This document shows, one piece after another, positions 1 to 64,000 of a DNA stretch of 64,000 nucleotides. The notes under the pieces were generated by a model. The model did no database searches, was not told the DNA's origin, and worked only from the letters and a program-made list of their open reading frames with translations. The position numbers and the translations under genes are program-made. Numbering within the stretch: position 1 is the stretch's first letter; each line of letters starts with the position of its first letter. The stretch lies in the IMG/VR virus record IMGVR_UViG_3300030107_006644, positions 1-64,000 of that record; one strand, 5' to 3'.

Positions 1-69
1 GATCGTGGCAATTTGAAGGCAACAAGCCCCGCACTTTATCAAAAAATACAACAACTAATGGACATTTAA
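1..69 (+). CDS. 3' end of an upstream hypothetical gene (partial)
   Basis: Frame 1 is open from the window edge (DRGNLKATSPALYQKIQQLMDI*) and stops 16 nt before the next ATG, matching local gene packing. Confidence 0.4.
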   Translation, partial: DRGNLKATSPALYQKIQQLMDI

Positions 70-85
70 CAATAATAGGTGAAAA

Positions 86-859
86 ATGACACATATTTCA
101 TTTTCTGAGCTAAAAAATTGGAATTTTTGCCCATTTTACCATAAATTGGTGAATTTGGACAAGATTTCCGGGTTTAAAGGCAACGAATACACGGCTTTTG
201 GTACCGCAATCCACGATGTTTGCGAAAAAGTGGCGTTAAAAGAGGAAATTGACCCCGAATCGCACTTTATTGAGCGATTCGAAGCAGAATTGGCCGATTT
301 GGACGAAGATGTTGAAATTCGACCACAATTGGTCGAATCTATGCGTTTTCAAGGCCGTCAACTGGCTCCTGAAGCGGTTCCGGCCCTTTTTGAGACCTTT
401 GGGTCGTGGGAGTTAGTAGAAGCCGAGGAAAAGCTGTATGAAGACATCAAAGATCACGACGATTACATGTTTAAGGGGTTCATTGACTTAGTAATCAAGT
501 CAGAGGATGGAAAATACCATATTATCGATTGGAAAACGTGTTCTTGGGGCTGGGACCACCGGCGCAAGGCCGATCCGATGACTACTTATCAGCTAACACT
601 GTATAAGCATTTCTGGTGCGCCAAACACGGCGTAGATCCCGAATTAGTTGAAACTCACTTTGCTTTGCTAAAGAGAACTGCAAAAAACAATCGAGTCGAG
701 ATTTTTAGAGTTACAAGCGGTGCTAAAAAAACAAATAATGCTCTTAACTTGCTAAACAAAGCGCTGCATAATATTAAAAGCAAAACTTGCATCAAAAATA
801 GATTATCATGCACATCTGGTTATGGTTGCGAGTTTTACAAGACAGAGCATTGCCCATAA
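86..859 (+). CDS. PD-(D/E)XK nuclease, Cas4/AddB/RecB-like exonuclease with probable Fe-S cluster
   Basis: N-terminal ISFSEL..W.FCP, GTAIH, GFIDLV..IIDWKT catalytic motifs, YQLTLY, C-terminal Cys cluster SCTSGYGCEFYKTEHCP; TAGGTG RBS. Confidence 0.85.
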   Translation: MTHISFSELKNWNFCPFYHKLVNLDKISGFKGNEYTAFGTAIHDVCEKVALKEEIDPESHFIERFEAELADLDEDVEIRPQLVESMRFQGRQLAPEAVPALFETFGSWELVEAEEKLYEDIKDHDDYMFKGFIDLVIKSEDGKYHIIDWKTCSWGWDHRRKADPMTTYQLTLYKHFWCAKHGVDPELVETHFALLKRTAKNNRVEIFRVTSGAKKTNNALNLLNKALHNIKSKTCIKNRLSCTSGYGCEFYKTEHCP

Positions 860-868
860 GGATTATAA

Positions 869-2146
869 ATGACAACAGAGAAAAAAATTAAGATATTAAC
901 AATATCTGACCACCCATTATCTTCTTCTGGCGTGGGGATTCAAACGAACAACATGATTTCCGGTCTTTTGGAAACCGGAAAGTATCAAATTATAAGCGTC
1001 GGCGGAGCTATAAAGCATGAAAATTATGAGCCGCAAAAGACTGATAAATATGGAGATGACTGGATTATATACCCAGTTGATGGATACGGTACCCAAGATA
1101 TGATTCGTTCTATCGTTCAAAACGAAAAGCCGGATATTTTGTGGTTTATGACAGACCCGCGCTTTTTTGAGTGGTTGTGGATGATTGATAATGAAATAAG
1201 ACAACATGTTCCGATGGTTTATTATCATGTGTGGGACAATTACCCATATCCACACTTTAATAAAAAGTTCTACGATTCTAATGATGTTATCGTCACAATC
1301 TCGAAGGTTACAGATGATATCGTTCGGAACGTTTCACCAGATGTTGAGTGTATTAGATTACCCCATTCGGTAGATACTGAACACTATAAACTTATAGATG
1401 AAGCCGAGGTAGATAAGTTTGTTAAAACAAATCCAGCCCTCTCACTGCATCGTGAAAAGGATAAGGTGTTGTTTTTCTGGAATAATAGAAATGCGCGCCG
1501 AAAGCAGAGTGGAAGCTTGTTATGGTGGTTCAAGGAATTTTTAGATGAAGTAGGCGAAGATAACGCGGCGCTTTTGATGCATACAGATCCCAAGGATCCA
1601 AATGGGCAAGACTTGGAGGCGATTCTGCAAGAGCTAGACGCACTGAACGGTCAAATAATGTTGTCGCCGGCTAAGATAGGCAGCGACGATTTAGCGCGAA
1701 TCTATAATGCTGTAGATTGCACAATTAATATCTCCGATGCAGAAGGATTTGGTTTGTCTACTTTTGAGTCACTGATGTGTGGCACTCCAATTATAGCAAA
1801 CATGACCGGAGGTCTACAAGAACAGGTAACCGATGGTAAAGAGTTTTTTGGAGTCGGTATCGAGCCTAGCTCCAAAGCTGTTATAGGTTCTCAGCAGGTA
1901 CCTTATATCTACGAAGATCGAATTAGCAAGGAAGATTTTATAAGCGCCTTGAAGAAGGTCTATAATATGACCAAGGAAGAGCGAAAAGCTCTCGGCGCCA
2001 AGGGCCGTGATTATCTCATGAAAAACTATGGGTTTAAGCAGTATCAGGAAAAGTGGGATGAAGTTCTAACAGATGTGCACAACAAGCATGGTTCTTGGGA
2101 TACTCGAAAAAATTATACAAATTGGACACTTACGGAGGTTGTATGA
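869..2146 (+). CDS. Glycosyltransferase, GT-B fold (GT4-like)
   Basis: N-terminal KILTISDHP..SSGVG, NRNARRK acceptor/donor loop, EGFGLSTFE (ExFGLxxxE) motif, GTPII. Confidence 0.9.
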   Translation: MTTEKKIKILTISDHPLSSSGVGIQTNNMISGLLETGKYQIISVGGAIKHENYEPQKTDKYGDDWIIYPVDGYGTQDMIRSIVQNEKPDILWFMTDPRFFEWLWMIDNEIRQHVPMVYYHVWDNYPYPHFNKKFYDSNDVIVTISKVTDDIVRNVSPDVECIRLPHSVDTEHYKLIDEAEVDKFVKTNPALSLHREKDKVLFFWNNRNARRKQSGSLLWWFKEFLDEVGEDNAALLMHTDPKDPNGQDLEAILQELDALNGQIMLSPAKIGSDDLARIYNAVDCTINISDAEGFGLSTFESLMCGTPIIANMTGGLQEQVTDGKEFFGVGIEPSSKAVIGSQQVPYIYEDRISKEDFISALKKVYNMTKEERKALGAKGRDYLMKNYGFKQYQEKWDEVLTDVHNKHGSWDTRKNYTNWTLTEVV

Positions 2147-15086: not shown

Positions 15087-18000
15087 ATGTCCGGACCAAA
15101 GGGAAACAAACTTAGAGAATTAATTGAAGAAACCATGACGGAGGAGTACGTTGCGGAAGAAGAAGCTGAAGAAACTGACACTGGTCTCGAACCTCAAGAA
15201 GGAACACTTGGTGAAGATGGAGAGGCTGAAGAGGAAGAAGAACTCACCGCTGCAGATATATTCGCTCCGATTTCCTGTACGGTAGAAGAAGAAGGGTGTA
15301 AGGAAGTAGACCTCACGGGCCTTTGTTCGGAGACGTGCACTCCGGATCCGTGCGCACATGTACCTGATTGGAAGTATGCTAGAGATCCTTACTTAAATAA
15401 GCAAAACTGTCACTATTGCGTAACCGTATTTACCGATGCATCAGACACTCAGGGTTCTGAAGAGGTTTTGCAGGAGATAAAGCTTGAGGCGATACGTAAA
15501 GGTGTTGCAAAGTTGCTCCATAAATATAATAAAAGTTTAACCTTTACTGGGTTTTGGGATCCTGAAGCCTGTGAAGATTCTGTCGAACAGCCGAGAATGG
15601 GCGGCTGCGCATGGTCTTCCGATGATCGCGTTGAGGATGTTGCATCTGAAGCCTCAGATGGTAGTTCTGCTGAGTCTGCGGGCGAAAGCACTATGCCTGA
15701 TGAAGCCTCTGAGGGGGTAGACTCTGACGACCCTGCTGAAGCGGGAGAGAGTGACTACTATGAAGATACTGCAGCCGACGATACAGATTCAGAATCCACC
15801 TCTTCGGAAGAAGGAGTTCCAGAACCCTCAGAAGAAGAGAGTGAACCAGTCCCCGTTGAAGGCGAGAGCAAGACGGCGGACGGAGAGACAGTTTATTGGT
15901 CCGAAGTTGAAGGCGAATGGATTGCAGAAGATAACTATTTTTCTGGCCCTGCATGGTACCCCGGCGATGTTTATGACGTTGTATATACTAGTCCGACAGG
16001 CGAATATTATTTGTTAGCTGCAGATGGCACGTATTGCAAATACGACGAAAATATAGCATTTAGAGAAACGCATGGGATTGCTTATGGTGTCGAGGCCGGC
16101 TATATTGCTCGGGCCAACACTATGATACAGACGGCATTTCAAATTTCAATGGAAGACGGAAACCTGTTCGGGCTAGAGTTTGCACTTTTGGGTTCGGCGA
16201 GTGACGGTCGATTTGAATCGTATATTTATGATGAAGACGAAGGAGTCTGCTATCAGGTGCAGACTAGTTCTGAGGCTTCCGAGGAGGAAGTTGATCTGCT
16301 TTCGGATGAAGATGATGACGAGCCGAGGTTTTATACCCCCGGCCCCGGAGGTTATGAGGGCGAGGAAGGCTCAGATGACAATCCGTGGGAGTCCGGCTCA
16401 GGCTCAGGCACAGGCAAAACAAAGGACGACGACGGTATAGATTCTGATGAGCCCTATTTGGATGATCACGGCCACCCGGGCTCGGGAGGCTCTGGTGGCG
16501 GCACCTACGCCGACGAAGATACTAGCGATAAGGGGTTTAATCGCGACACTTCGTGGAAAACTGCTTCCTTTACTGATACGTGGAAGTATCTGTGTGGAGG
16601 TTCGATAGACTGGGACTTCGAAACAGCATCAGGCACTACTGAAGACGATGTAACCAAATATGTCGATGGTCATGCTCTCGCTGCAGATTATTTCTTGAGA
16701 GCAGATACGAGGTTGAGGGTGAATGTTTGCATCCCTGCTAATATATTTGACAACATTCCAGAAAGAACAGATACATCTGCATATAGCCCCATGGCATCTA
16801 CGTGGGCGACAGGCACTGCTGACAAGTCCGCTTGGAAAGTAACATTAACGTCTGAAGATATAGGTTCTCAAATATCTCGCGTTAGGTGGATCCTAAAGCA
16901 CTACGGCGAAAAAAGATATCCTATGTCGTTCAAGGATACAAACCTCGTTATGGGCGAGACCTACAACGGAATGACTCAAGACGAGTGGAACGCCCAACAG
17001 GAAGAGTTCTGGGGTACGGATGCTGTAAGGTTATCTCATGTGTGGACGGCAGACACTTTCCTTGAACAGAGAACCAACTTAGAAGAGTTTCAAACAAGTT
17101 TATTAAATTTTCTAGATAGAAACATGGCCCACACAGAGACTGGCACATATAGAGTTAGAAACTTTTGGAGCGAAAACATTAAAGCCGGCGGAATCGAAAA
17201 CATGTTATTGGAATTCGATTCAAATTTGCATCTTAAAGCGATAACGGTTACAAGAAGAGGCTGTCCGCCCTTTACTTTAATGTCTGCAGCCGATGCAGCT
17301 GCGATTGAAGAAGAGAAGAGTCGAGTACGTGCTCTGATGCTGGTAGAGGACGCTATAGAAGAGGGAGAAACGACAGCAGAGGAAGAGATTACCAGCGACT
17401 ACAATGTTACAGACTACTTTTATAATTTAGGTTATTCGATAGGAGGCGACGAAGTTACGGAAGGATCGCTCGATCTACAGCAAGAGTTGGACGATCTTAC
17501 TGATGACGATAGAAAGATGGCCATGGCCAACCCGTTTCAAAATCCTGAAATAATAGCCGCAAACCAATGGGAGGAATTTGCAGAATCCTACCCATGCACA
17601 GATCCCAGAACAATGGCGTATGTTGCCTCGCTGCCCTATATGGACAACAGCTTGCAGGCAGACACACCATTAGCGTGGCAAGACTTCATGATGCTATATA
17701 CGTATCCTACGATTGCGTTTGAAAACTTTGATGAAATGCGAGACAACGATCCTCCTTGCAATTCTATATCTAGCGCTGCAGAGAACATATTAGATAGCAC
17801 GTTTGATATATTTATGGAAACCTTGCTGGGGCAATATAATAAAAACCTGTGCCAAACATGGGAGGGCTTCAACGCTGACCGGGAAGATCGTTGGAGTTCT
17901 GCGATTGAGGATGGTTGGAAAGGGGGCTTGAGAGACATAGCCGGCCAAGATCCGTTTATAAAGGCGGTCATGGAACACATCGATCATGTTGGCAGTCTTG

Positions 18001-21000
18001 ATGGACTTTGGGTTAGCATGTTCAGCCGGTTAAGTAAATGTGGCTGGCTCTCTTTATTAGAATCGTGGATGAAGTGTTGGTTAGCCGGCATGACGTTCGA
18101 TCAAATTCTACAGACAGTGATCAACAGTGCTCTAGAAAATATGGATTTCGAAGGATTGGGGCAACTTCTGACGATTGGGTTGACAGAACAACAGCGAAAC
18201 GAGATTATGGATATGGTCGCCGAAGCTGCTCCGGAGCTAGCACAGTATCGCCCGTGGGAAAACACAGACATGCTGGTGGAAAGAGATAAGTATGCATTAA
18301 CCAAGGCAGAGACATACGCGGGGTTTCAGACCACCGAAGGTCAAGCTTCCCTCGCCGCCCTGAATGAAGCCAATCGAACGCAGGCTGAGGCTAACGACGA
18401 GGCCTACGAAGACATAACGGCCTCAGCAGCAGCACGAACTTATGCGGAAGCTCAAGCAACTGCAGGCTTTCCAAATCTCAGTAGCGAACAGGCTGCCATT
18501 GCCAGCCGTCGAGAGACAGAGTACATACAAGCTACAGCAGAGACTAAAACGCTGGGTGCGATATTGGTTGATTCTGGAGCAGTCGCCGCACTAAAGGATG
18601 CCTATGTGGAGGCGCTCATGGAGTTATTAACTCCAGCAGAGTTGCTGGAAATTATGCAAAATAGCTTAAACATTCCTTTGGGATGGCTCTCTGAACTTGG
18701 CGAAGTGTTTGCTTGTCCAAACTATGCTATCTTTGATCCCCCGTTTGATTCGTGGTTTAGACAGTTTATGGAGACCCTATCTCAATGGGACTGGAAATGG
18801 TGGTGCAAAGCAGGAGAAAACCTCTCTTGGCCAGAACTATGGTTTAAGTGGCCTCCCTTAACTTTTGATTGGGTTCTTGAATTTATTAAGATCCTGTTGG
18901 ATGCTTTGGAAGCTGCATTGGTTGAGGCACTCAAGACCTTGATAAAAATGCTCATCCAGATGCTTTATGACGCGCTCTGTAATCTCATGGGTTCCATTGG
19001 AGCAGCAGCGCTGACCGGCGTGGGACTAATGTCTGAAACCGAACATATGGATTGGCTGAAGGAAAATCTTTGCGGCTCTAATGCAACAGATGCAGAACTT
19101 CAATCTGCTCTTGCTGTTGCCGCCCGTGCAATGGGTATCGCCAACATGGAAATGACTGAGGTTGAGCTAGAAGAATATGGAAGATCAGCTGTAGAGGTTA
19201 TGGGTTCTGCTGCGAAGTCAATGCCGGCACACGTAACACTTAATCTTCTGACTGGTAACGCCAGTCGCGAACAAATGATTGATGCTTGCGATTATTTTGG
19301 CTCGACGGATACCGCTATTGGAGACTCGCTCTCTAATCCGCAAAACTGTGAAAAATTCTATAAGACTCTTGGCGGCGTTTTCATTGGTCAAGAGGCAATT
19401 GAAAAGGTACGCGATAATTTCATAGCAAAAATGAAGTGTGCAGATGGCTATAGCTTGTGCGGAATTGATGATCTCGAAGGACACAAACAAGATCTTGCAA
19501 AGTCCCTGTTGGCCACAAAGCAGCTGACAATGGATCAGGTTGAGAAAATTATTAATGACGAGGTGGGAAGTAGAATAGAAAACTTCTCAAAGGTAGCAGG
19601 AGCGTATACGAATGGCGGCATGCCAACACAGACAGGGTTTGGAACTTGCGCGGCAAAAGTTGACGCTTCTGGTCAACCCGTCGCCGCCACGGGCTCATGT
19701 CCGGAGACCGCAAATGCATTCCTCTTAAGGGAAAATCCAGAAACACTATCAGAAGCGCGCGGAGTAGCGGGTGCAATATTTGAAGCTTGTCAGGTTGAGT
19801 ACGAAAAAGAGTTATCAGGCATAGGCGGCCTCTTTGATCGAATATTATCGAACAAAGATGGGGAAGGCAAGCAAATGCATGACCGAAACTTGGTTGAAAA
19901 TCTAGAAAACGGAATACACAACCCCTACACGATTGGTAAGTATTTGCAAGGTGTCCTCGCCGGAGATACGAGCGAATATACATATTTTACGGGGGATAGT
20001 CGCAAAACACAATCGTTTACGTTGAGCAGGTTTAATTCAAGCGCAGGCATATCGGATCATCATGTAGCTGACGCAGAGGGAGAAATAACCTGCTTTACAA
20101 AAGCTACGCAAAGAAACATAAAACAATATATTTGGTCTTTTGACAAGGTTTGGTTAAACGATTATATCTATGGGATAGACTATCACACAGATAGCAGTTA
20201 CCGTGATTCTGATCACGAAGGTGGTTGGGATATTTGGACACACCAAGACTCATTAGACGAAAGAATTCCCGGTAACAGCAAGACGGTCAACGATCTACAC
20301 GAAGAAGGGGTTGAATCTAATTTTCAAGCCGGAGAGGAATGGAAAGTTTATTCAATTTATAGAAAATATAGATATAAAAGAAAGGGAGTTGTTGACTATC
20401 CAAATCCGACTTGTGTTATGGAGTATAATAGCACCGATCCGTTTAAGGGCGAGGAGGATGATAAAGGCCAGCCACACTATGTAATTCACTATTGGCATGA
20501 CGAGAGGGCCGTTAGAGATAAAACTACTAACTACTATTCTTCTGCCGAAGATGAGCTGATTAGGGATACTGCCAAACTGCATTTATTCTGGGTCCTACCA
20601 GAGTCCGAACAAGAAGGTGAGGGAGAATTTACAATCGACTACGCAGAGAGCCCCCTCTCGCGGGATGCGAAGGAACAGGCGGGTAACATCATGTCCTTGC
20701 ACAACGGCATGGGCGCCCGATCTCAAACTTCCCGGGCTAATGGAGCGCTAAATCCGATCATACGCGTTGTTTCGGACATACCTTCTGGCACTCTTGAACA
20801 AATACAGAACATAGATATTACCGGAATGGTTTCCGATTCTGAAGAATGGGCCAACGACGGCTCCAGATCTTACCAAAAGCCGGCAGTGTTTGCCAAGCAC
20901 ATTAGAAATATAATAGCAGAAGCATCAACTACAGAGGAAGACGCCGACGCTGATGCTAGTTTAGACAATGTACTTGAATCCATGACAGAAATACTTCGAA

Positions 21001-23465
21001 CTGATGAGTACGATCTGTTTTGCAATTCGTTTATTGAGCAATACGCTAAACAAATCGCCGATCAAGACAGTGCGTGGAAATCAGGATTGTTTAATTTCAT
21101 ACTTCAAGAAATTCCTACGGATGACGATGCGCCTGATGACTGGGAAGATGAGACGGTACAAAGTTTAGGCATTGTAGACGGCGATGGTGAGGCAATATTG
21201 AATAGTGGAAAGCACAGAGACAAGGAGGGAGATCAGTACGGTACACCGTTCGACACAGGCTGGTACCGTCCGGAAGAAGATGAAAGAATTAAAGGCCTGT
21301 CGGAAAATGTAAACCTACCAGAAGACGAGTATGGTACTGCTGCATATTATGTGCATAACCAGTATCAATATGGGTGGGCTAGACTGGCTGATGAGTGGCT
21401 ACCGGGCCCAGCAAATCCTTGCGAAGAGCAAGTCGGCGCCGACTTATTCGGATGGTCCGATCTCGAATCATACTGGTACGACAGATATCTTAATATTGCG
21501 GACGATCAGCGAGTTTCTTATAACCCATCCTGTACGTGGGATCCTCCATATGATCGTGTGAATACGCGCACCAACAAGGCTACTATGGAGGCCGTCATCA
21601 AGGCGACAATGAGGGTGACGATATTTGAGTTCGCTATTAAGGGTATGGCTGCCTTATCTAAATTTGATGCTTCTGCCGGCGTCTTTGGGGATCTTTTACC
21701 AGCATATATTTATGCCAACTTTAGGCAATTCTTGCACGAATGGTCGAAAACGTTTTGGGGAAGAATACAAAAGGGACATCAAAAATACGATCACGCCTTC
21801 TTGGAGCAGTGTGTGACCATGTACGCGCGCGGGATGGCAGATGGTCGATATCCTACGGAACAGGTAGTATTAGAGGCCATTGATCGCATTGACGAAGCAA
21901 TTAACAAATACTACCACCAACCTCAGTCGGATTGGTTTCATGCAACAAGAAATGGTACCCGTCGTAAAGTTTGGGAGAAAACAGAAACTGATGCATCCTT
22001 TATTGCGATGAAACTGTTCAAGGCAGAGTTTGAAGAAGCAATGGAAAAGATATCTAATTTTGTTTGCGGAGGCGAAGGACTGGTTGACGATTTGCAGATG
22101 CACTTTTTGAACGGCCACATGAATCTCGCCGGCGCACCAACCACAGTTTTGGGCACCAATGTGGTTAGCGATCTAGGAACACAAAGAAGGGCAGAACTCA
22201 CAGAGGTTCCAATAGAAAATCTTTCAGGTGTTGCAGTATCTGTGCTTAAAATTAAACCTGAGTATGAATATTTGAAAAGTGGAGGCTTCCTGCTTGAGCG
22301 CTACATTTATGTTGAGGACAAGGAAGAAGAGGACGAAGAGGTCAGCGACCGCGCTGATTCATTAAAGAAAGTTATCAACCTAGACGACTGGAAGTCGTAT
22401 GTTGAATCGAAGGGTTGGGATGATGAGGAATCGCAAGTTAGAGTGGGAGACCATTTTGATAATTGGAAATTTGGCTTAAGACTATCATATGTTCCAGCCA
22501 CAGAAGATCTTAGAGCGGCTGAAAATTTTGCTCATATCTCAGATGCTACAGCATTGGAGCAAAAGGCGTTCAAGATCGAAGAGCCGGATATTGTTGCAAG
22601 CATTACCCGTAGTGGCACCGGCGCCGGAGTGTGGGATTATACTATGGACGAGCTTGAGAGCGCAACAGAACTACTTGAACGTTTTGCGGGATTAGCACAA
22701 GATGCAATGAATCAAACTGCAGCTGCTGAAGCCGGCGAAGATGGAGAATACGAGGAGATAGAAATTGACGTCTCGGGAGTGTTTGATGCCATTGAAGCAA
22801 CCGATCCATTGCGGCTGATACCGCTAGTCTCTTATGAGCTTGAGATTCCGTCTGAAATGCTGATAAGAAACTTTGATGTTGTCGAAGACTACGACATTGA
22901 CTGTATGACTCAGCAATTGAGAAACGACGATACTTTTAAGGCTCTCTTTGAGTACTCCTTGCCTTTAAATAAGTTTTTGAGTCTGCCAACGATATATACA
23001 ATGCAGTCCTTCCTAGATTCTATTGGACTACAGGATGAGTGGTACCAAAAGGGCACAGAAGACGATGAGGGGGTTGACTATCCAGATCCATATCCGGGAG
23101 TATTTGGGATGTGGGCTAGAAGGCTACAGCACAGTTATGGCCCGGGCCTTATGACTGGAGACTGGTGGAAATCAGTTTTTGGATTCTTTAAGGTAAGAAA
23201 AAGTTATCGAGGCTGGGATAAGAGGTGCTTTGTAGAGACTCGCGAACTCTTGTTTGACTTGTTTGTTAATTCTTACGACTATAGCGGCAACGGAGGCTGG
23301 CGTTGGCCAAAGTTCAAGTTAAATTTCAGGTTGAACTTAAAGATTCCACCTTTTGCCTTTTTCTGGTTACCCAGATGGAGGATGAACAGGCAGCTGCCCG
23401 GACCCGACTGCGACGATGACGAAGCGGCATCAGCCGCAGAACGCGCTGCGTACAATAAGTCGTGA
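15087..23465 (+). CDS. Very large acidic, Cys-rich protein (2792 aa), probable baseplate/tail-associated
   Basis: Uninterrupted 8.4 kb ORF between spike-like and gp25-like genes; D/E-rich tracts; Trp-rich segments; no recognisable enzyme motif. Confidence 0.6.
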   Translation: MSGPKGNKLRELIEETMTEEYVAEEEAEETDTGLEPQEGTLGEDGEAEEEEELTAADIFAPISCTVEEEGCKEVDLTGLCSETCTPDPCAHVPDWKYARDPYLNKQNCHYCVTVFTDASDTQGSEEVLQEIKLEAIRKGVAKLLHKYNKSLTFTGFWDPEACEDSVEQPRMGGCAWSSDDRVEDVASEASDGSSAESAGESTMPDEASEGVDSDDPAEAGESDYYEDTAADDTDSESTSSEEGVPEPSEEESEPVPVEGESKTADGETVYWSEVEGEWIAEDNYFSGPAWYPGDVYDVVYTSPTGEYYLLAADGTYCKYDENIAFRETHGIAYGVEAGYIARANTMIQTAFQISMEDGNLFGLEFALLGSASDGRFESYIYDEDEGVCYQVQTSSEASEEEVDLLSDEDDDEPRFYTPGPGGYEGEEGSDDNPWESGSGSGTGKTKDDDGIDSDEPYLDDHGHPGSGGSGGGTYADEDTSDKGFNRDTSWKTASFTDTWKYLCGGSIDWDFETASGTTEDDVTKYVDGHALAADYFLRADTRLRVNVCIPANIFDNIPERTDTSAYSPMASTWATGTADKSAWKVTLTSEDIGSQISRVRWILKHYGEKRYPMSFKDTNLVMGETYNGMTQDEWNAQQEEFWGTDAVRLSHVWTADTFLEQRTNLEEFQTSLLNFLDRNMAHTETGTYRVRNFWSENIKAGGIENMLLEFDSNLHLKAITVTRRGCPPFTLMSAADAAAIEEEKSRVRALMLVEDAIEEGETTAEEEITSDYNVTDYFYNLGYSIGGDEVTEGSLDLQQELDDLTDDDRKMAMANPFQNPEIIAANQWEEFAESYPCTDPRTMAYVASLPYMDNSLQADTPLAWQDFMMLYTYPTIAFENFDEMRDNDPPCNSISSAAENILDSTFDIFMETLLGQYNKNLCQTWEGFNADREDRWSSAIEDGWKGGLRDIAGQDPFIKAVMEHIDHVGSLDGLWVSMFSRLSKCGWLSLLESWMKCWLAGMTFDQILQTVINSALENMDFEGLGQLLTIGLTEQQRNEIMDMVAEAAPELAQYRPWENTDMLVERDKYALTKAETYAGFQTTEGQASLAALNEANRTQAEANDEAYEDITASAAARTYAEAQATAGFPNLSSEQAAIASRRETEYIQATAETKTLGAILVDSGAVAALKDAYVEALMELLTPAELLEIMQNSLNIPLGWLSELGEVFACPNYAIFDPPFDSWFRQFMETLSQWDWKWWCKAGENLSWPELWFKWPPLTFDWVLEFIKILLDALEAALVEALKTLIKMLIQMLYDALCNLMGSIGAAALTGVGLMSETEHMDWLKENLCGSNATDAELQSALAVAARAMGIANMEMTEVELEEYGRSAVEVMGSAAKSMPAHVTLNLLTGNASREQMIDACDYFGSTDTAIGDSLSNPQNCEKFYKTLGGVFIGQEAIEKVRDNFIAKMKCADGYSLCGIDDLEGHKQDLAKSLLATKQLTMDQVEKIINDEVGSRIENFSKVAGAYTNGGMPTQTGFGTCAAKVDASGQPVAATGSCPETANAFLLRENPETLSEARGVAGAIFEACQVEYEKELSGIGGLFDRILSNKDGEGKQMHDRNLVENLENGIHNPYTIGKYLQGVLAGDTSEYTYFTGDSRKTQSFTLSRFNSSAGISDHHVADAEGEITCFTKATQRNIKQYIWSFDKVWLNDYIYGIDYHTDSSYRDSDHEGGWDIWTHQDSLDERIPGNSKTVNDLHEEGVESNFQAGEEWKVYSIYRKYRYKRKGVVDYPNPTCVMEYNSTDPFKGEEDDKGQPHYVIHYWHDERAVRDKTTNYYSSAEDELIRDTAKLHLFWVLPESEQEGEGEFTIDYAESPLSRDAKEQAGNIMSLHNGMGARSQTSRANGALNPIIRVVSDIPSGTLEQIQNIDITGMVSDSEEWANDGSRSYQKPAVFAKHIRNIIAEASTTEEDADADASLDNVLESMTEILRTDEYDLFCNSFIEQYAKQIADQDSAWKSGLFNFILQEIPTDDDAPDDWEDETVQSLGIVDGDGEAILNSGKHRDKEGDQYGTPFDTGWYRPEEDERIKGLSENVNLPEDEYGTAAYYVHNQYQYGWARLADEWLPGPANPCEEQVGADLFGWSDLESYWYDRYLNIADDQRVSYNPSCTWDPPYDRVNTRTNKATMEAVIKATMRVTIFEFAIKGMAALSKFDASAGVFGDLLPAYIYANFRQFLHEWSKTFWGRIQKGHQKYDHAFLEQCVTMYARGMADGRYPTEQVVLEAIDRIDEAINKYYHQPQSDWFHATRNGTRRKVWEKTETDASFIAMKLFKAEFEEAMEKISNFVCGGEGLVDDLQMHFLNGHMNLAGAPTTVLGTNVVSDLGTQRRAELTEVPIENLSGVAVSVLKIKPEYEYLKSGGFLLERYIYVEDKEEEDEEVSDRADSLKKVINLDDWKSYVESKGWDDEESQVRVGDHFDNWKFGLRLSYVPATEDLRAAENFAHISDATALEQKAFKIEEPDIVASITRSGTGAGVWDYTMDELESATELLERFAGLAQDAMNQTAAAEAGEDGEYEEIEIDVSGVFDAIEATDPLRLIPLVSYELEIPSEMLIRNFDVVEDYDIDCMTQQLRNDDTFKALFEYSLPLNKFLSLPTIYTMQSFLDSIGLQDEWYQKGTEDDEGVDYPDPYPGVFGMWARRLQHSYGPGLMTGDWWKSVFGFFKVRKSYRGWDKRCFVETRELLFDLFVNSYDYSGNGGWRWPKFKLNFRLNLKIPPFAFFWLPRWRMNRQLPGPDCDDDEAASAAERAAYNKS

Positions 23466-24259: not shown

Positions 24260-26068
24260 ATGGCTAGCAAAATAATACCGATTAAGTATACGAGCAGAGA
24301 TTTTAATTCGATTAAAGCCGATTTGGTTGAATATGCAAGGCGGTACTATCCTGACACATTCAAGGATTTTAACGAAGCCAGCTTCGGCGCACTAATGCTT
24401 GATACTGTTGCCTACGTGGGCGATGTGTTGTCGTTCTATATGGACTACCAGATTAATGAGTCTTTTATTGACACTGCGGTAGAGTATAGCAATGTGTTGC
24501 GACTGGCAAGACAACAGGGTTACAAGATTCCGGGTGCAGCATCAAGCTTTGGAGAAGTCTCCTTATATATTCTGATTCCAGCAAACAGCACAGGGCTAGG
24601 CCCCGATCCAGACTTTATACCAACATTGATGGAGGGTTCTACATTTTCTGCTCAAGGTGGAACCACCTTTTCGTTACTGGAAGACATAGATTTTTCAAAT
24701 CCAGATAATGAGGTTGTGGCCGCTAAAATAAATGAAGCGACCGGCGTGCCAACACATTATGCGATTAAAGCATACGGCAAGGTGGTGTCAGGCAGGGTTA
24801 CCTATAAGGATTACACTGTGGGCACCTTTAAGAGATTTAGAAAAATAAGAATTGGCCCGCGAAGTGTGGGAGAGGTTTTATCTGTAACGGATTCAGAAGG
24901 AAATCGCTATTATGAGGTTGGCCACTTATCACAAAACATGGTTTATGCACCGGTCGCAAACGTGTCAGACGACAGAACTACTGTGCCGAATATCATAAAG
25001 CCGCTAATAGTGCCTAGGAGGTATGTTGTTGAACGCAATGGTTCTGACTGCTTCATCCAGTTTGGACACGGCTCAGAGTCTGAATTAAATAGTCCAAGTA
25101 TTGAGGATCCGCGCTCCGTAGCAATACAAGTGCATGCTAAAAAATACACTACAGATAGAGAGTTTGACCCGAATAAATTGTTGTTTACCGATACGATGGG
25201 TATTGGTCCACAAAATACAACGATAAGAGTGACGTATAGAACCAACGGCACAGGCCGCACAGGCGCCGCAGTTAACGGGATCACCCGAGTTCAGACTCCG
25301 ATTTTTAACTTCAAGACAACCAAATCAAGCGTACTGGCTGATGCTCGATTGGGCTCTGTTAAGAAGTCGCTGGAGCTAACCAACGAAAGTGTTATTCCTT
25401 CGGCCAGTGGCAGAATCTCGACAACAGAGCTTAAGAAGAGAGTTGCAGGACATTACGCTGCGCAAAATAGAGCAGTGACAAAAGAGGATTATCTAACTTT
25501 GGTGTATACAATGCCGGCCAAATTCGGCTCAGTAAAGCGGGCGAATATATTGCGAGATCCCGACTCTTTTAAGAGAAATTTGAATCTATACATTATATCA
25601 GAAACTAATAGGGGGCACCTAACCCAATCCACCACAACGTTAAAGCAGAATATAAAAACTTGGCTAAACCAACATAGAATGCTTAGCGATACTATCGACA
25701 TTTTAGATGCGAAAATAATAAACTTTGGTATTGAATTTGAAGTCAAGGCAATGCCAAATGTAGATAAGACGGCGGTATATACTTCTTGCCGGAATATGCT
25801 GCGTGATGAACTATCAGGCCCTACTCGTATCAAGGATATTGGAGAGCCACTTTCTTTGTCGCGACTTTACACAAGGCTAAATAACATCAGAGGAGTTATG
25901 GACGTAAAAACGATTAAAGTATTGCAGAGAAGCGGTACACCATATTCTCAAGTTGTGTACGACATTAAGAGCAACATGACGGCTGACGGACAATACCTAA
26001 AGGTTCCCGACAACTGCGTAATAGAATTAAAATACCCATCTAGAGATATACAAGGAACGGTTAGATAA
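24260..26068 (+). CDS. Baseplate wedge protein, T4 gp6 / baseplate J-like
   Basis: YTSRDFNSIK..L, DFNEASFG, ESFIDTA, LARQQGYK, IQFG.G, AQNRAVTKEDY motifs; follows gp25-like gene. Confidence 0.88.
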   Translation: MASKIIPIKYTSRDFNSIKADLVEYARRYYPDTFKDFNEASFGALMLDTVAYVGDVLSFYMDYQINESFIDTAVEYSNVLRLARQQGYKIPGAASSFGEVSLYILIPANSTGLGPDPDFIPTLMEGSTFSAQGGTTFSLLEDIDFSNPDNEVVAAKINEATGVPTHYAIKAYGKVVSGRVTYKDYTVGTFKRFRKIRIGPRSVGEVLSVTDSEGNRYYEVGHLSQNMVYAPVANVSDDRTTVPNIIKPLIVPRRYVVERNGSDCFIQFGHGSESELNSPSIEDPRSVAIQVHAKKYTTDREFDPNKLLFTDTMGIGPQNTTIRVTYRTNGTGRTGAAVNGITRVQTPIFNFKTTKSSVLADARLGSVKKSLELTNESVIPSASGRISTTELKKRVAGHYAAQNRAVTKEDYLTLVYTMPAKFGSVKRANILRDPDSFKRNLNLYIISETNRGHLTQSTTTLKQNIKTWLNQHRMLSDTIDILDAKIINFGIEFEVKAMPNVDKTAVYTSCRNMLRDELSGPTRIKDIGEPLSLSRLYTRLNNIRGVMDVKTIKVLQRSGTPYSQVVYDIKSNMTADGQYLKVPDNCVIELKYPSRDIQGTVR

Positions 26069-57485: not shown

Positions 57486-57879
57486 CAAAAAGCAATTTAA
57501 AGGTTTAGTTGCCGAAGCGTTAAAGACCGTTTTGGAGATTGAAGAGCCGCCATTTAGAACGGGGCTGAGCAAGGCCGACTGGGAAGGCCCGGGCGATCCC
57601 CGTGGTGCCGGCGCAGATCTTGATGTTTTCCCGGAAACTGAAGCTGAGAAGCTGGGAGATCGGATCGCCGCAGCTATGGAAGCTGGAATTAGAAATGTTT
57701 TAATGAGCCACTTGGGCGACCAAGAAGGCTTAACAGTATACGATAAGTATTTAGCCGATGTCGATGATGATATTCTGAGTATTGCTATGCACATGCGCGA
57801 TGCCGCGATGGACATGGTAGGAGAACCAGAAGGAATCACTGGCGACGAAGAAGACGAAGATTTACAGGAGGAATGGTAA
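57475..57879 (+). CDS. Leader-tagged acidic small protein
   Basis: MKVSKKQFKGLVAEAL; AAGGAG RBS. Confidence 0.7.
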   Translation: MKVSKKQFKGLVAEALKTVLEIEEPPFRTGLSKADWEGPGDPRGAGADLDVFPETEAEKLGDRIAAAMEAGIRNVLMSHLGDQEGLTVYDKYLADVDDDILSIAMHMRDAAMDMVGEPEGITGDEEDEDLQEEW

Positions 57880-58247
57880 TGCAAATAACCATCAAAAGAC
57901 TAAAAGAGATCATTAAAGAAGAGGTGGATTATTTCAACCAACTTCTCACAGAGCAGGGTCCGCCCCCCGGCGGCGGTATGCCGCCCGGAGCACCCCCTGT
58001 TGGAGGCCCTCCCCCCGGGATGGGTCCACCCCCCGGAGGCCCGCCTCCCGGCATGGGAGCCGCACCCGGAGGTCCGCCTCCCGGTGGAATGCCCCCCGGA
58101 GGCCCACCCTCCGGACCACCCGGCGGAGATCCCATTCAGGGTGCTATCGCAGCCCTTGAGGGTGGTGACGCCGCTTCAGCCCTTCAGATCCTTAAGTCGT
58201 TAGCTGGCCCACCCGCCGGCGGCGGTATGCCACCCGGCATGGGATAA
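57879..58247 (+). CDS. Leader-tagged Pro/Gly/Met-rich protein
   Basis: MQITIKRLKEIIKEEV..LLTE then GPPPGGGMPPG repeats; AGGAGG RBS, TAATG overlap (track start 57873). Confidence 0.7.
   Translation: MQITIKRLKEIIKEEVDYFNQLLTEQGPPPGGGMPPGAPPVGGPPPGMGPPPGGPPPGMGAAPGGPPPGGMPPGGPPSGPPGGDPIQGAIAALEGGDAASALQILKSLAGPPAGGGMPPGMG
57957..58244 (+). repeat. Low-complexity GC-rich coding repeat (GPPPG/MPPG units)
   Basis: About ten imperfect (G/M)PP(P)G units with varied codons. Confidence 0.8.
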
Positions 58248-59422: not shown

Positions 59423-59438
59423 AAGGTGAGGAATAAAA

Positions 59439-60835: not shown

Positions 60836-60838
60836 GTC

Positions 60839-60867: not shown

Positions 60868-60883
60868 TAGTATAAGGTGAAGT

Positions 60884-61090
60884 TTGAGTGCTATTGAAGC
60901 CATGCCTCCAAGTTTGTTATTTGCCGCAATATGCAGCTATTTAGCGGTTTATTTGTTCGGTATGTTCACCGGATTTATGATGGTTGAACGTAACAAAATG
61001 ACCAGACAAATTCGAGAGTACCAACGCGCCCGAGAGAGAGAGTTAAACCAACAGTGGTCCAATAACGATTGGGATCACCCCGTATACTAG
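60884..61090 (+). CDS. Small single-pass membrane protein
   Basis: Hydrophobic LLFAAICSYLAVYLFGMFTGFMMV followed by charged helix; start could be TTG 60884 or ATG 60902. Confidence 0.55.
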   Translation: MSAIEAMPPSLLFAAICSYLAVYLFGMFTGFMMVERNKMTRQIREYQRARERELNQQWSNNDWDHPVY

Positions 61091-61096
61091 GAATGT

Positions 61097-64000
61097 ATGA
61101 TGAAGTTTGCGCATATTGCGGATACGCATATTAAAAATTTAAAATACCACCACGAATATAAGGAAGTGTTCGCACAACTGTATGAAACACTAAGAGACGA
61201 ACAGGTTGATTGCATCGTTCATTGTGGCGATATTGCACACACAAAAACACAAATCTCACCAGAGTTTGTAGAAATGTGTTCTGACTTTTTTCGAAACTTG
61301 GCAACCATCGCGCCGACATATATTATTCTAGGCAATCACGATGGCAATCTAAAGAACAGCAGTCGACAGGATGCTCTGACTCCTATCGCAGACGCTTTGG
61401 ACTTACAAAACTTACATCTGTTGAAAGATTCAGGCGAGGCTGTTTTAAATGACAAATTCTGCTTAAATGTTTTGTCGGTTTTTGATGAGGAGAATTGGTG
61501 CGATCCCACTGATGAGGACAAGATCAACATCGCCCTCTATCATGGTTCGATCTCGGGAGTAAAAACAGACCTTGGCTGGGTTATGGAGCATGGAGAACAT
61601 GATATTAGTATTTTTGATAATTTTGACTTTGCTTTTCTTGGAGATATCCACAAGACAAATCAAAAGTTAGACACAGAAGGTCGGATCCGATATTCCGGCA
61701 GCACGATTCAGCAGAATCATGGTGAAACAAACGACAAAGGGCTGTTGCTGTGGGATATCCAAGATAAAGATAATTTTAGTTGCAAGCACATTGCATTTAA
61801 AAACCCGAAGCCATTTGTTACTATTGAATTAACACCAAAGGGTAGGATCCCGAAAGGAACAGCCGTGCCCAAGGGCGCCCGCCTGCGTTTGGTATCCAAC
61901 AATAACCTTCCTCTAACTCGCTTGAAGAGAGCTGTTGACATTGCAAAGCATAGATTTAAGCCGGAAGCAATCACTTTCTTAAATCGAGCTTTGGGACAGA
62001 GAGGAAGTGTTGATTCGTTAACAAACACGATTATTAAGGAAAATCTTAGAGACACCGCTGTGCAAGAAAGGCTTATGCGCGAGTATCTTAAGGATTACGA
62101 GATTGATGATACTATGATGGAGCGAGTGTTGACGCTGAACTCAAAGTACAACCAGATGGCCGAGCAAGAAGAGGAAGTTAGCAGAAATATCAACTGGAAG
62201 CTAAATTCGGTAAAGTTTGATAATCTGTTTAATTATGGCGAAGGCAATTCTATTGACTTTACAAACCTTGCTGGCGTAGTTGGTATTTTTGGGAAGAATT
62301 ATAGCGGTAAAAGCAGTATTATCGACTCTATTTTATACACTATGTTCAACTCAACGTCAAAGAATGAGAGAAAGAACTTAAACGTTATCAATCAAAACAA
62401 GGAGTTTTGTGCCGGCACTGTTGATATTTCGATTGGCGAGCGTTCTTACGAAATTAGCAGAACTTCAGAAAAGTACGTCAAAAGGCTGAAGGGCGAAGAG
62501 ACCTTGGAGGCAAAAACCGACCTAAACTTTGAACAAAGAGATGCGGTCACCAACACCACACGCAGTTTGAATGGTCTTACGAGAATAGAAACAGACAAGC
62601 AAATACGAAAGATGTTTGGAACACTTGACGATTTCTTGCTGACCTCTATGGCTAGCCAACTTGACTCGCTAACCTTCATCAATGAGGGCTCAACGAGGCG
62701 AAAAGAGATTTTGGCCAAGTTCTTAGATTTGGAGATATTCGAAAAGAAATACAGGCTAGCCAAGGAGGATGCTAGTGACCTTCGCGGAGCACTCAAAAGG
62801 CTCGAAAATAGAGAATTTGAGCAAGATATCGCTGCAGCAGCGCTTGAGTTGTGTGAGAGCGAAGATAAGATTGAAAAGCACAAGAGTCGGTGTGAAAAGT
62901 ATCAAGTATCGATAGACAAGATAGGCGAAAAGATACAGGATTTAGAGGAGAAAGTGGGCTCTGTGCCGGTTGAACTGATCGATGTGGCGAACACTAGAGC
63001 CGAGATCGAAAAGCTCACAGTACAAGAGCAGTCACTGCAGTCGAAACTTGAGGAAGAGAGTAAGGATTTGAAGATTCGAACGGAACTTTACGAGAAGATT
63101 ATTAACTTTCTGGACACCATGGATATCGAGGAGTTGAGAGAAAAGAAGGAAAAGGTAGAATCACTAAACTCTACAGTGCTTGAGGTTGAATCTATGCTTC
63201 AAAACATAGATCAAAAGGCAAAATTACTCGACGGAATCCCGTGTGGAGATACATATCCCACCTGTAAGTTTATCAGAGATGCCAATGTGGCAGTAGCTAA
63301 CCGCCACCACTCCGTAAAGGAGCTAAAAACAGCCCAAAGCCGACTTGAGGAGCTTGATAGTGTGACTGTTACCGATCACATAGGCAAGTATAACAGCGTA
63401 CTTCAGAGAAAAAACCAAGTTTCTACTGGAATTGCCGAACTTAACCTGTCTATTGAGCGAAATTCTAATACGCTAGAGAAAACTATAGACAAAATACAGG
63501 TTTTAAACGAAAAGGTGGAAGAATACAACAAAAACAAGGACACAATTGACAATTTGGAGGCAATGATGTCGAAATTGTCAAAGATGCGGAACAACGTTGT
63601 GTCCTATAGGGAACAGAAGGCGCAATGTGAGGAGAGTTTGACCTCGCTGTATGTTGAGCACGGCTCTTTAGAGCAAAAATTGCGCAACTTGGAGAGCCAA
63701 AAGCAAGAACTACAAGATTTGCATGAGCAATACTCGTCTTTTGACCTGTATATGCGTTGTATGCATTCTAATGGAATTGCATATGATATCATCAAGAGAA
63801 AACTTCCGATTATTAACGAAGAAATCGCCAAAACTTTGGCAAATATTGTCAACTTTAACGTTTACTTCGAGGATGATGGAAAAAGGCTCAATATCTTTAT
63901 TAAGCACCCCAAACACGATCCGCGACCTATTGGTATGGGCTCTGGTGCCGAGAAAACAATAGCAGCAATGGCTATCAGACTGGCCTTGTTGTCTATATCA
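61097..64000 (+). CDS. Fused SbcD-SbcC (Mre11-Rad50, T4 gp47-gp46-like) nuclease/ATPase, 3'-truncated by window end
   Basis: Manual translation: FAHIADTH, CGDIAH, LGNHD, LYHG, LGDIH, YSGS (phosphoesterase), then in the same frame GKNYSGKSS (Walker A), coiled coil, PCGDTYPTC, MGSGAEK signature; absent from ORF track because there is no stop in the window. Confidence 0.9.
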   Translation, partial: MMKFAHIADTHIKNLKYHHEYKEVFAQLYETLRDEQVDCIVHCGDIAHTKTQISPEFVEMCSDFFRNLATIAPTYIILGNHDGNLKNSSRQDALTPIADALDLQNLHLLKDSGEAVLNDKFCLNVLSVFDEENWCDPTDEDKINIALYHGSISGVKTDLGWVMEHGEHDISIFDNFDFAFLGDIHKTNQKLDTEGRIRYSGSTIQQNHGETNDKGLLLWDIQDKDNFSCKHIAFKNPKPFVTIELTPKGRIPKGTAVPKGARLRLVSNNNLPLTRLKRAVDIAKHRFKPEAITFLNRALGQRGSVDSLTNTIIKENLRDTAVQERLMREYLKDYEIDDTMMERVLTLNSKYNQMAEQEEEVSRNINWKLNSVKFDNLFNYGEGNSIDFTNLAGVVGIFGKNYSGKSSIIDSILYTMFNSTSKNERKNLNVINQNKEFCAGTVDISIGERSYEISRTSEKYVKRLKGEETLEAKTDLNFEQRDAVTNTTRSLNGLTRIETDKQIRKMFGTLDDFLLTSMASQLDSLTFINEGSTRRKEILAKFLDLEIFEKKYRLAKEDASDLRGALKRLENREFEQDIAAAALELCESEDKIEKHKSRCEKYQVSIDKIGEKIQDLEEKVGSVPVELIDVANTRAEIEKLTVQEQSLQSKLEEESKDLKIRTELYEKIINFLDTMDIEELREKKEKVESLNSTVLEVESMLQNIDQKAKLLDGIPCGDTYPTCKFIRDANVAVANRHHSVKELKTAQSRLEELDSVTVTDHIGKYNSVLQRKNQVSTGIAELNLSIERNSNTLEKTIDKIQVLNEKVEEYNKNKDTIDNLEAMMSKLSKMRNNVVSYREQKAQCEESLTSLYVEHGSLEQKLRNLESQKQELQDLHEQYSSFDLYMRCMHSNGIAYDIIKRKLPIINEEIAKTLANIVNFNVYFEDDGKRLNIFIKHPKHDPRPIGMGSGAEKTIAAMAIRLALLSIS

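What the first reader, a model, noticed from the sequence alone, without database searches (positions are those of the whole stretch)
1..64000. CCWGG appears to be absent from the whole window
Seen: scanning CCAG/CCTG occurrences by eye I found no CCAGG or CCTGG, whereas several tens would be expected at this roughly 40-45% GC. In the Pro/Gly gene all 10 Pro-Gly junctions use CCC-GGN although CCA/CCT are used 9 times elsewhere in that gene. Known: CCWGG is the Dcm/EcoRII site. Inference: either strong selection by a host CCWGG-targeting defence, or mutational erosion from 5mC deamination without Vsr repair, which predicts excess CTAGG/CCTAG and CTTGG/CCAAG. It may help identify the host.
Basis: partly seen in the sequence, partly recalled or inferred. 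Interest (0 to 1): 0.6.

Follow-up and report, generated by a model that had tools for sequence, protein, structure and literature searches.

The report
Marine phage purged of restriction sites
This 205-kb marine virus of bacteria has removed every copy of CCWGG and of eight other short palindromes from its DNA by silent codon changes, a known way for a virus to escape its host's DNA-cutting enzymes, seen here in extreme form.

Summary
CCWGG occurs 0 times in the window, against about 85 expected. It occurs 0 times in the whole 205,517-bp genome, against 294 expected from a null that keeps every protein and each gene's codon usage. Eight more palindromes are also absent: CGATCG, GAGCTC, GACNNNGTC, CTCGAG, CCGCGG, CCTNAGG, CGTACG and CACGTG. 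Together that is 0 observed against about 534 expected.

The genome is an uncultured marine Far-T4-like myovirus found in Tara Oceans data. It shows no match to the three DNA methyltransferase families or the tyrosine integrase family tested.

Sites are removed by synonymous codon choice: all 232 Pro-Gly pairs use CCC or CCG. The products expected from 5mC deamination are not in excess, so the erosion alternative is rejected.

Six of the nine sites are avoided across 51 related phage contigs. CCWGG, CGATCG and CCGCGG are lineage-specific. Loss of CCWGG appears in four separate places on the capsid tree. A related Flavobacterium phage shows no avoidance, and a related Microcystis phage shows its own large set.

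The best explanation is selection by Type II restriction-modification systems of an unidentified host. This is a striking new example of a known strategy.

The parts
1..64000 (.). The whole window is free of CCWGG and of CGATCG, GAGCTC, GACNNNGTC, CTCGAG, CCGCGG, CCTNAGG, CGTACG and CACGTG. The window is the first 64 kb of a 205,517-bp phage genome that has the same property throughout.
   Evidence: Expected in the window from the codon-shuffled null: 85.4, 10.5, 9.0, 7.6, 9.2, 8.2, 8.8, 7.4 and 6.8. All are observed 0 times. CCSGG is in excess (111 observed, 74 expected).
57873..58247 (+). All 10 Pro-Gly junctions are CCC-GGN.
   Evidence: Pro codons in the gene: CCC 18, CCA 5, CCT 4, CCG 4. 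Before Gly only CCC is used.
15087..23465 (+). ORF of 2792 aa, an example of a long gene with synonymous avoidance. Its 9 Pro-Gly pairs use only CCC (5) or CCG (4), although CCA (29) and CCT (25) are its common Pro codons.
24260..26068 (+). gp6-like baseplate wedge gene. It identifies the genome as a T4-superfamily myovirus and gave the first links to relatives.
   Evidence: phrog_219, phrog_6. (31% identity to Microcystis phage Mel-JY01, 30% to Flavobacterium phage immuto).

Best explanation
The window belongs to an uncultured marine Far-T4-like myovirus that escapes restriction by carrying no target sites. Selection by Type II restriction-modification enzymes in its host, or across its host population, has removed every copy of nine short palindromes, CCWGG among them. 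The removal is almost entirely by synonymous codon choice, so the proteins are unchanged. The phage shows no match to the three DNA methyltransferase families tested (Pfam C5, N6/N4 and D12), so its DNA probably enters each new cell unprotected. Each site is then an independent chance of being cut before the host methylase reaches it. Losing any one site raises the escape probability by a constant factor, which can drive counts to zero. Six of the sites form an avoidance set shared by the whole marine clade. CCWGG, CGATCG and CCGCGG were added in this lineage. Shown here: the absence, its statistical strength, the synonymous mechanism, the absence of the tested methyltransferase families, and the mosaic distribution among relatives. 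Inferred: that host restriction enzymes are the selective agent, and which enzymes they are.
For: (1) Nine palindromes have a count of 0 against a summed codon-shuffled expectation of 534. In an unbiased scan of all 3+N(0-9)+3 palindromes, eight of these are the only zero-count words with expectation above 8. All nine match recognition sites of known orthodox Type II enzymes in the REBASE list shipped with Biopython. (2) Avoidance is synonymous in all three reading frames. CCA/CCT is used 0 of 232 times before Gly, NCC 0 of 260 times before TGG/AGG, CAG 0 of 84 times in NNC-Gln-Gnn and CTG 0 of 301 times in NNC-Leu-Gnn. Relatives G001 and G003 use these codons in those contexts. (3) The 61 genes without a homologue in relatives G001-G003 (34.9 kb) also have 0 sites against 54.6 CCWGG expected. 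About 12.5 CCWGG would be expected in the 12.2 kb of non-coding DNA, which also has none. (4) No hit to Pfam C5, N6/N4 or D12 methyltransferase models and none to the tyrosine integrase model. (5) Relatives carry different sets. G001 has ACGT 0 against 353 expected but CCWGG 143 against 251. G003 adds AGGCCT, CCTAGG and ACGCGT. G004, G005 and L059 have no CCWGG and very few GGCC. Microcystis phage Mel-JY01 has GATC 0/384, CTAG 0/157, GGWCC 0/80 and CCWGG 1/100. Flavobacterium phage immuto avoids nothing. (6) The CCWGG-free state sits in 4 places on the capsid tree, at least 2 of them forced by well-supported branches. (7) The pattern matches the published picture: complete elimination of sites mostly concerns orthodox Type II sites in non-temperate dsDNA phages (PMC6286503).
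Against: The host is unknown, so no cognate enzyme has been shown. GAGCTC is missing from 49 of 51 diverse relatives (3 observed, 228 expected). R-M systems are usually patchy, so this uniformity is surprising and could point to a cause inside the phage. The methyltransferase test covers three Pfam families only. Asymmetric sites (CAGCTC, CACGAG, GGGAC) are only partly depleted and show no strand bias, which is not explained in detail.
Confidence: 0.85

Rival explanations
1. Mutational erosion. CCWGG was methylated by a Dcm-like enzyme, and 5-methylcytosine deamination without Vsr repair turned the sites into CTWGG/CCWAG over time.
For: CTTGG/CCAAG is mildly over-represented (497 observed, 435 expected, z = 3.8). 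5 of 42 orthologous positions show a deamination-type single change.
Against: The total for CTWGG/CCWAG is only 38 above expectation, where 294 sites are missing. CTAGG is below expectation. The main replacement is CCSGG (27 of 42 positions; 347 observed against 244 expected), which deamination cannot produce. Decay gives depletion, not 0 of 294. No C5 methyltransferase is present in the phage. Eight unrelated palindromes are also at zero.
Confidence: 0.03
2. Self-avoidance. The phage clade encodes its own sequence-specific nuclease or nucleases, for example to degrade host DNA, and protects itself by lacking the sites rather than by methylation. This would apply mainly to the six clade-wide sites such as GAGCTC.
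For: GAGCTC is near-universally absent across 51 non-redundant relatives with 39-48% GC (O/E 0.01). The clade lacks methyltransferases of the tested families. 18 of the 20 clade-conserved ORFs scanned against Pfam have no match, so a hidden nuclease cannot be excluded.
Against: No restriction-endonuclease family was detected in the phage (the RE_SacI control rang nowhere, so that test is weak). None of the six sites is truly universal: G002 has 19 CTCGAG, and three relatives carry 4-6 CCTNAGG. The lineage-specific and convergent sets (CCWGG, GGCC, ACGT) look like an external, changing pressure.
Confidence: 0.05
3. Avoidance of methylation rather than of cleavage. Sites are purged so that a host methylase cannot mark the progeny DNA, which would otherwise be cut by methylation-dependent (Type IV) enzymes in the next host.
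For: It would give the same sequence signature. CCWGG methylation is common in bacteria (established knowledge, not tested here).
Against: It needs two host types for each site and is less parsimonious for nine sites. There is no direct evidence either way in the sequence.
Confidence: 0.05
4. Chance, composition or an assembly artefact.
For: None.
Against: The minimum over 200 codon-preserving shuffles is 258. The Poisson probability of 0 given 294 is negligible. An identical capsid protein lies on independent Tara Oceans contigs. The reading frames are intact, and the avoidance is codon-precise.
Confidence: 0.005

Closest known systems
Restriction-site avoidance in virulent dsDNA phages (survey: Rusinov et al. 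2018, PMC6286503)
   Same: Short palindromic Type II recognition sites are eliminated in a dsDNA phage with no tyrosine integrase hit and no hit to the methyltransferase families tested. The survey reports complete or near-complete elimination in about one tenth of viral genomes.
   Different: Here the host is unknown. The number of fully purged sites is at least nine in 205 kb, with 294 expected copies of a 5-bp site reduced to zero. A core avoidance set is shared by a whole uncultured marine clade.
Microcystis phage Mel-JY01 (PP395634.1), the nearest cultured relative by baseplate protein
   Same: It is a large myovirus of the same broad Far-T4-like group (capsid about 46% identical). It shows massive multi-site avoidance that includes CCWGG (1 observed, 100 expected) and CCTNAGG (0 observed, 9 expected).
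   Different: Its main avoided sites differ: GATC, CTAG, GGWCC, GAATTC, GATATC and TTATAA. It is a freshwater phage with 34% GC, has only 32 reciprocal best hits at 33% identity, and carries no tmRNA gene.
Dcm/Vsr system and CpG-like decay by 5mC deamination
   Same: It concerns the same motif, CCWGG, and would also lower its frequency.
   Different: It predicts an excess of CTWGG/CCWAG and only partial depletion. Neither is seen. No C5 methyltransferase is present.
Uncultivated Far-T4 phages (Roux et al. 2015, PMC4360716; Rhodothermus phage RM378; Flavobacterium phage immuto)
   Same: gp23-type capsid, portal, terminase, sheath, ribonucleotide reductase and PhoH genes, with wide aquatic distribution.
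   Different: Site avoidance was not described in the paper text searched (0 occurrences of 'restriction'). The cultured Flavobacterium member shows no avoidance.

Membership tests
Phage restriction-site avoidance (anti-restriction by site elimination) | The depleted words are short palindromes of the kind recognised by orthodox Type II enzymes. | tested here: met
   All nine zero-count words are palindromes and match REBASE sites (EcoRII/MvaI, PvuI, SacI, Tth111I, XhoI, SacII, Bsu36I, BsiWI/SplI, PmlI)..
Phage restriction-site avoidance (anti-restriction by site elimination) | The depletion goes beyond base composition, oligonucleotide bias, amino-acid sequence and codon usage. | tested here: met
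   Dinucleotide shuffles, maximal-order Markov and codon-shuffled null. The null is calibrated on immuto and G003.
Phage restriction-site avoidance (anti-restriction by site elimination) | Sites are removed by synonymous substitutions, with proteins conserved. | tested here: met
   232 of 232 Pro-Gly pairs use CCC/CCG, and all three reading frames show complete exclusion.
Phage restriction-site avoidance (anti-restriction by site elimination) | The host encodes restriction enzymes with the same specificities. | not testable with these tools
   The host is unknown. The literature gives only Flavobacteriales predictions for some Far-T4 phages.
Phage restriction-site avoidance (anti-restriction by site elimination) | The phage lacks its own protective methyltransferases for these sites. 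| tested here: met
   No six-frame hit to PF00145, PF01555 or PF02086 in the 205-kb genome, with the controls positive. Other methyltransferase families were not tested.
Phage restriction-site avoidance (anti-restriction by site elimination) | Non-temperate lifestyle, where avoidance is strongest. | tested here: inconclusive
   No tyrosine integrase (PF00589) and a T4-like gene set. Serine integrases and the actual lifestyle were not tested.
Phage restriction-site avoidance (anti-restriction by site elimination) | The avoided set varies among related phages, tracking hosts rather than phage phylogeny. | tested here: met
   CCWGG loss appears in 4 places on the capsid tree. G001 lacks ACGT, and immuto avoids nothing.
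Dcm-type 5mC deamination decay | Excess of the deamination products CTWGG/CCWAG matching the missing sites. | tested here: not met
   622 observed against 584 expected (z = 1.9), where 294 sites are missing. 5 of 42 orthologous replacements are of this type.
Dcm-type 5mC deamination decay | A C5 cytosine methyltransferase acts on the genome. | tested here: not met
   No PF00145 hit in the phage. Host enzymes could not be tested.
Dcm-type 5mC deamination decay | Graded depletion with residual sites. | tested here: not met
   0 of 294 expected, including in lineage-specific genes and non-coding DNA.

The most novel reading that the evidence does not exclude
The near-universal absence of GAGCTC, and the strong depletion of CCTNAGG, CACGTG, CTCGAG, GACNNNGTC and CGTACG, across the whole marine tmRNA-bearing Far-T4-like clade may not be due to patchy host R-M systems. 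It may instead reflect a clade-conserved, phage-encoded site-specific nuclease activity against host DNA. The phages would protect themselves from it by lacking the sites instead of by methylation. This self/non-self scheme has not, to my knowledge, been described for phages. A milder novel reading is that the avoidance 'barcodes' are specific enough to assign hosts to the so far host-less Far-T4 phages.
Probability: 0.05. Interest if true: 0.8.

Novelty: new member of a known kind. Interest (0 to 1): 0.42.

Why it matters
Site avoidance is a known anti-restriction strategy, so the principle is not new. This case is unusually clean and large: nine sites with about 534 expected copies, none observed, in a 205-kb genome. 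It lies in the Far-T4 phages, an abundant aquatic group whose hosts have resisted prediction since 2015 (PMC4360716). The avoided-site sets differ sharply between close relatives and converge between distant ones. They therefore act as a record of the restriction enzymes each phage meets. Matched against R-M repertoires or methylomes of marine genomes, they give a direct, testable route to host assignment. They also give a picture of how rich the restriction arsenal of that host population is.

Tried and rejected
- Megablast of 20 kb against cultured phage genomes gave no match.
- A literature search for organisms with this combination of sites found nothing useful.
- Host search through the phage tmRNA tag: a degenerate pattern for HFDSVRLAA-stop in genome contigs gave one hit, in a Methylobacter MAG. 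It is not a tmRNA and is at the chance level. This used the only genome-contig scan.
- psbA as a cyanophage marker is absent.
- Strand bias of the partly depleted asymmetric sites, as a test of Type III-style evasion: none was found.
- RE_SacI (PF09566) in the phage: no hit, but the control rang in no genome, so the test is uninformative.
- Pfam scan of 20 clade-conserved ORFs absent from the Flavobacterium and Microcystis phages: no nuclease family. Two were a MoxR-like AAA ATPase and a DUF2201 metallopeptidase/VWA protein, and 18 had no hit.
Whole records were fetched and counted in Python instead.
- From memory only, several of these sites are specificities first found in cyanobacteria (SplI, SplII, MstII, AceIII). 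I treated this as a lead and could not test it. The phage's tRNAs for AGA, UUA and AAA and its 46% GC give no clear host signal either.
Full report
**1. The observation**

- An exact search finds no CCWGG in the 64-kb window. Dinucleotide-preserving shuffles give 81.9 ± 9.4.
- The window is the first 64 kb of a single 205,517-bp virus record (45.8% GC). CCAGG and CCTGG are also absent there, and they are the only missing 5-mers.
- Three nulls agree for the genome:
  - The maximal-order Markov model expects 218 (z = -18).
  - Permuting synonymous codons within each of 199 ORF-called genes expects 294 ± 13, with a minimum of 258 in 200 shuffles. This null keeps all proteins and per-gene codon usage.
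  - The same codon-shuffled null expects 85.4 ± 7.1 in the window alone.
- The null is not biased. It reproduces the observed counts in a related Flavobacterium phage (148 observed, 134 expected) and in relative G003 (200 observed, 219 expected).
The ORF at 57873-58247 has 10 Pro-Gly junctions, all CCC-GGN, with 9 CCA/CCT elsewhere in the gene.

**2. What else is there**

CCWGG is one of nine palindromes with zero copies in the genome. Expected counts come from the codon-shuffled null.

| Site | Observed | Expected |
|---|---|---|
| CCWGG | 0 | 294 |
| CGATCG | 0 | 40 |
| GAGCTC | 0 | 36 |
| GACNNNGTC | 0 | 32 |
| CTCGAG | 0 | 31 |
| CCGCGG | 0 | 31 |
| CCTNAGG | 0 | 29 |
| CGTACG | 0 | 22 |
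| CACGTG | 0 | 19 |

- Together that is 0 observed against 534 expected.
- In an unbiased scan of every 3+N(0-9)+3 palindrome, the eight of these sites that fit that format are the only zero-count words with expectation above 8.
- Two further candidates are CCGWCGG (0 observed, 17 expected) and RCGWCGY (12 observed, 62 expected).
- Some asymmetric words are only partly depleted and show no strand bias:
  - CAGCTC: 17 observed, 91 expected.
  - CACGAG: 14 observed, 54 expected.
  - GGGAC: 112 observed, 208 expected.
- CCSGG, CCGG and CCCGGG are over-represented. This is where the lost CCWGG sites went.

**3. How the sites are avoided**

Exclusion is complete in all three reading frames, always by a synonymous alternative:
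- CCA/CCT is never used before Gly (0 of 232), although these are 52% of Pro codons overall.
- NCC is never used before TGG or AGG (0 of 260).
- CAG is never used in NNC-Gln-Gnn (0 of 84).
- CTG is never used in NNC-Leu-Gnn (0 of 301).

Relatives G001 and G003 use these combinations freely. Two further results show that the purge is complete everywhere:
- The 61 genes with no homologue in G001-G003 (34.9 kb) are as clean as the shared genes (0 observed, 54.6 expected).
- The 12.2 kb of non-coding DNA is also free of CCWGG, where about 12.5 would be expected.

**4. The deamination alternative**

- CTWGG/CCWAG is 622 observed against 584 expected (z = 1.9). CTAGG is below expectation and CCTAGG is at expectation.
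- At 42 positions, relative G001 has CCWGG inside residues conserved in this genome. This genome has CCSGG at 27 of them and a Dcm-type single transition at 5. One caveat applies: conditioning on conserved residues limits which changes can be seen.
- The phage encodes no C5 methyltransferase.
- Total loss of a site, together with eight unrelated palindromes, is not what mutational decay produces.

**5. What the genome is**

- PHROG and Pfam hits identify a T4-superfamily myovirus. The hits include a gp6-like baseplate wedge, gp23-type capsid, portal, large terminase, tail sheath, DnaB-like helicase, ribonucleotide reductase, a large DNA polymerase, GroEL and PhoH.
- The closest cultured relatives are remote: Microcystis phage Mel-JY01, Flavobacterium phage immuto and Rhodothermus phage RM378. 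That places the genome among the 'Far-T4' phages of Roux et al. (PMC4360716).
- The identical capsid protein lies on Tara Oceans contigs (PRJEB4419), so the phage is marine.
- There is no hit to the N6/N4 or D12 methyltransferase models, to psbA or to the tyrosine integrase model.
- Published host predictions for Far-T4 phages are either called spurious by their authors (PMC4360716) or point to Flavobacteriales for some members (PMC7198788 and PMC13037479). I could not identify the host.

**6. Relatives**

- The capsid protein finds more than 598 IMG/VR contigs.
- I fetched five whole records and two cultured phage genomes. G001 is the closest complete relative, with 132 reciprocal best hits at a mean of 59% amino-acid identity.
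- Avoidance is mosaic:

| Genome | Sites absent or nearly absent (observed/expected) | Sites present (observed/expected) |
|---|---|---|
| G001 | ACGT 0/353; also GAGCTC, CTCGAG, CCTNAGG, GACNNNGTC, GGTNACC | CCWGG 143/251, CGATCG 33/30, CCGCGG 36/26 |
| G003 | GAGCTC, CTCGAG, CCTNAGG, CACGTG, AGGCCT, CCTAGG, ACGCGT | CCWGG 200/219 |
| G004, G005, L059 | CCWGG; GGCC very low | |
| Mel-JY01 | GATC 0/384, CTAG 0/157, GGWCC 0/80, CCWGG 1/100; also GAATTC, GATATC | |
| immuto | none | |

- Pooling 51 non-redundant relatives (1.1 Mb) gives six clade-wide avoided sites:
  - GAGCTC has O/E 0.01 and is absent from 49 of 51 contigs.
  - CCTNAGG has O/E 0.12.
  - CACGTG has O/E 0.17.
  - CTCGAG has O/E 0.23.
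  - GACNNNGTC has O/E 0.28.
  - CGTACG has O/E 0.28.
  - The median over all palindromes tested is 0.95.
- So six of this genome's nine sites belong to a clade-wide set, while CCWGG, CGATCG and CCGCGG are lineage-specific additions.
- On a capsid tree the CCWGG-free state needs 4 changes, at least 2 of them forced by well-supported branches.

**7. Interpretation**

The simplest account is the known anti-restriction strategy of eliminating sites under selection by orthodox Type II R-M systems.
- It matches the published survey: avoidance mostly concerns Type II sites and non-temperate dsDNA phages, and about a tenth of genomes show complete elimination (PMC6286503).
- With no methyltransferase of the tested families, each site is an independent risk of cleavage. 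Each loss therefore multiplies the escape probability by a constant factor. This step is inference.
- Complete elimination, rather than a few tolerated distant sites, suggests a single-site cutter rather than an enzyme that needs two sites, such as EcoRII. This is also inference, from established enzymology.
- The unexplained point is the near-universality of GAGCTC avoidance across a diverse clade. It suggests either a very widespread host system or a cause inside the phage.
- I looked for a phage-borne restriction-like nuclease and found none, but most of the conserved ORFs scanned have no detectable family. I keep this as a low-probability rival.

**8. Verdict**

The finding is a new and extreme member of a known kind of phenomenon. 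Its practical value is as a host-linking barcode for Far-T4 phages.

Noticed in passing
Outside the window: genome 195888-196224 (L010:5888-6224, + strand); also in relatives G001, G002 and G003: The phage encodes a full-length tmRNA (Rfam RF00023, 126.7 bits) with the tag ANNNNHFDSVRLAA. G001 has the same tag. G002 has ANDNVEVDYALAA and G003 has ANNNVAFDYALAA. Mel-JY01 and immuto have none. At least four tRNA genes (Arg-tct, Leu-taa, Lys-ttt, Gly-gcc) lie just downstream; Rfam also gives a marginal fifth tRNA hit at L010:7440-7521. A phage-borne tmRNA conserved across a marine clade is unusual, and its role is unknown.
   Followed up: partly
Relative G001 (IMGVR_UViG_3300030419_006251, 200,760 bp; loci L091-L101) and its sister L013: The 4-bp palindrome ACGT is completely absent (0 observed against 353 expected from codon shuffles). 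L013 has 0 against 38 expected. This is an even more extreme purge than CCWGG in the window's genome.
   Followed up: partly
Whole genome, including the window: GCCGGC is strongly over-represented (163 observed, 61 expected, z about +15). 128 of the 163 copies are in the frame GCC-GGC (Ala-Gly). RCCGGY, GGCGCC and CTGCAG are also in excess. GCCGGC is likewise in excess in G001-G003, so this is not a by-product of CCWGG avoidance. The cause is unknown; it may be codon-pair bias or a signal.
   Followed up: partly
window:869-11464 (+): An 11-kb block of sugar-nucleotide and glycosyltransferase genes. It contains a GT4 (with a weak match to 'GT4 in conflict systems'), a GT2, a nucleotide-diphospho-sugar transferase, a GT47/exostosin-like enzyme, an NTP-transferase fusion, an epimerase and a GDP-mannose 4,6-dehydratase (434 bits). 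Several of these genes are specific to this genome. The target of glycosylation (virion, host surface or DNA) is unknown.
   Followed up: partly
window:86-859 (+): A PD-(D/E)XK nuclease (PF12705, RecB/Cas4-like) is conserved in all relatives, including Mel-JY01 and immuto. It is probably a recombination exonuclease, not a restriction enzyme.
   Followed up: no
window:15087-23465 and 27552-39830 (+): Two giant ORFs (2792 and 4092 aa) flank the baseplate genes. They were not scanned for families or otherwise examined here. From their position they are presumably structural or fibre proteins.
   Followed up: no
Whole genome: Asymmetric words are partly depleted on both strands: CAGCTC/GAGCTG (17 observed, 91 expected), CACGAG/CTCGTG (14 observed, 54 expected), GGGAC (112 observed, 208 expected) and RGGWCCY (16 observed, 58 expected). 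The 7-bp palindromes CCGWCGG (0 observed, 17 expected) and RCGWCGY (12 observed, 62 expected) are also low. These may be further restriction specificities.
   Followed up: partly
Outside the window: genome 141275-142849 and 130180-133659: The phage encodes a GroEL-type chaperonin (phrog_5725, 483 bits) and a 1159-aa DNA polymerase (phrog_405).
   Followed up: no
Outside the window: genome 171995-173224 and 170841-171908: The ORF that PHROGs labels 'HNH endonuclease' (phrog_1314) is, by Pfam, a DUF2201 metallopeptidase plus VWA-like protein. It lies next to a MoxR-like AAA_5 ATPase. The PHROG label looks misleading.
   Followed up: partly
Outside the window: genome 136785-136794: A run of 10 N, which is a scaffold gap in the record.
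   Followed up: no
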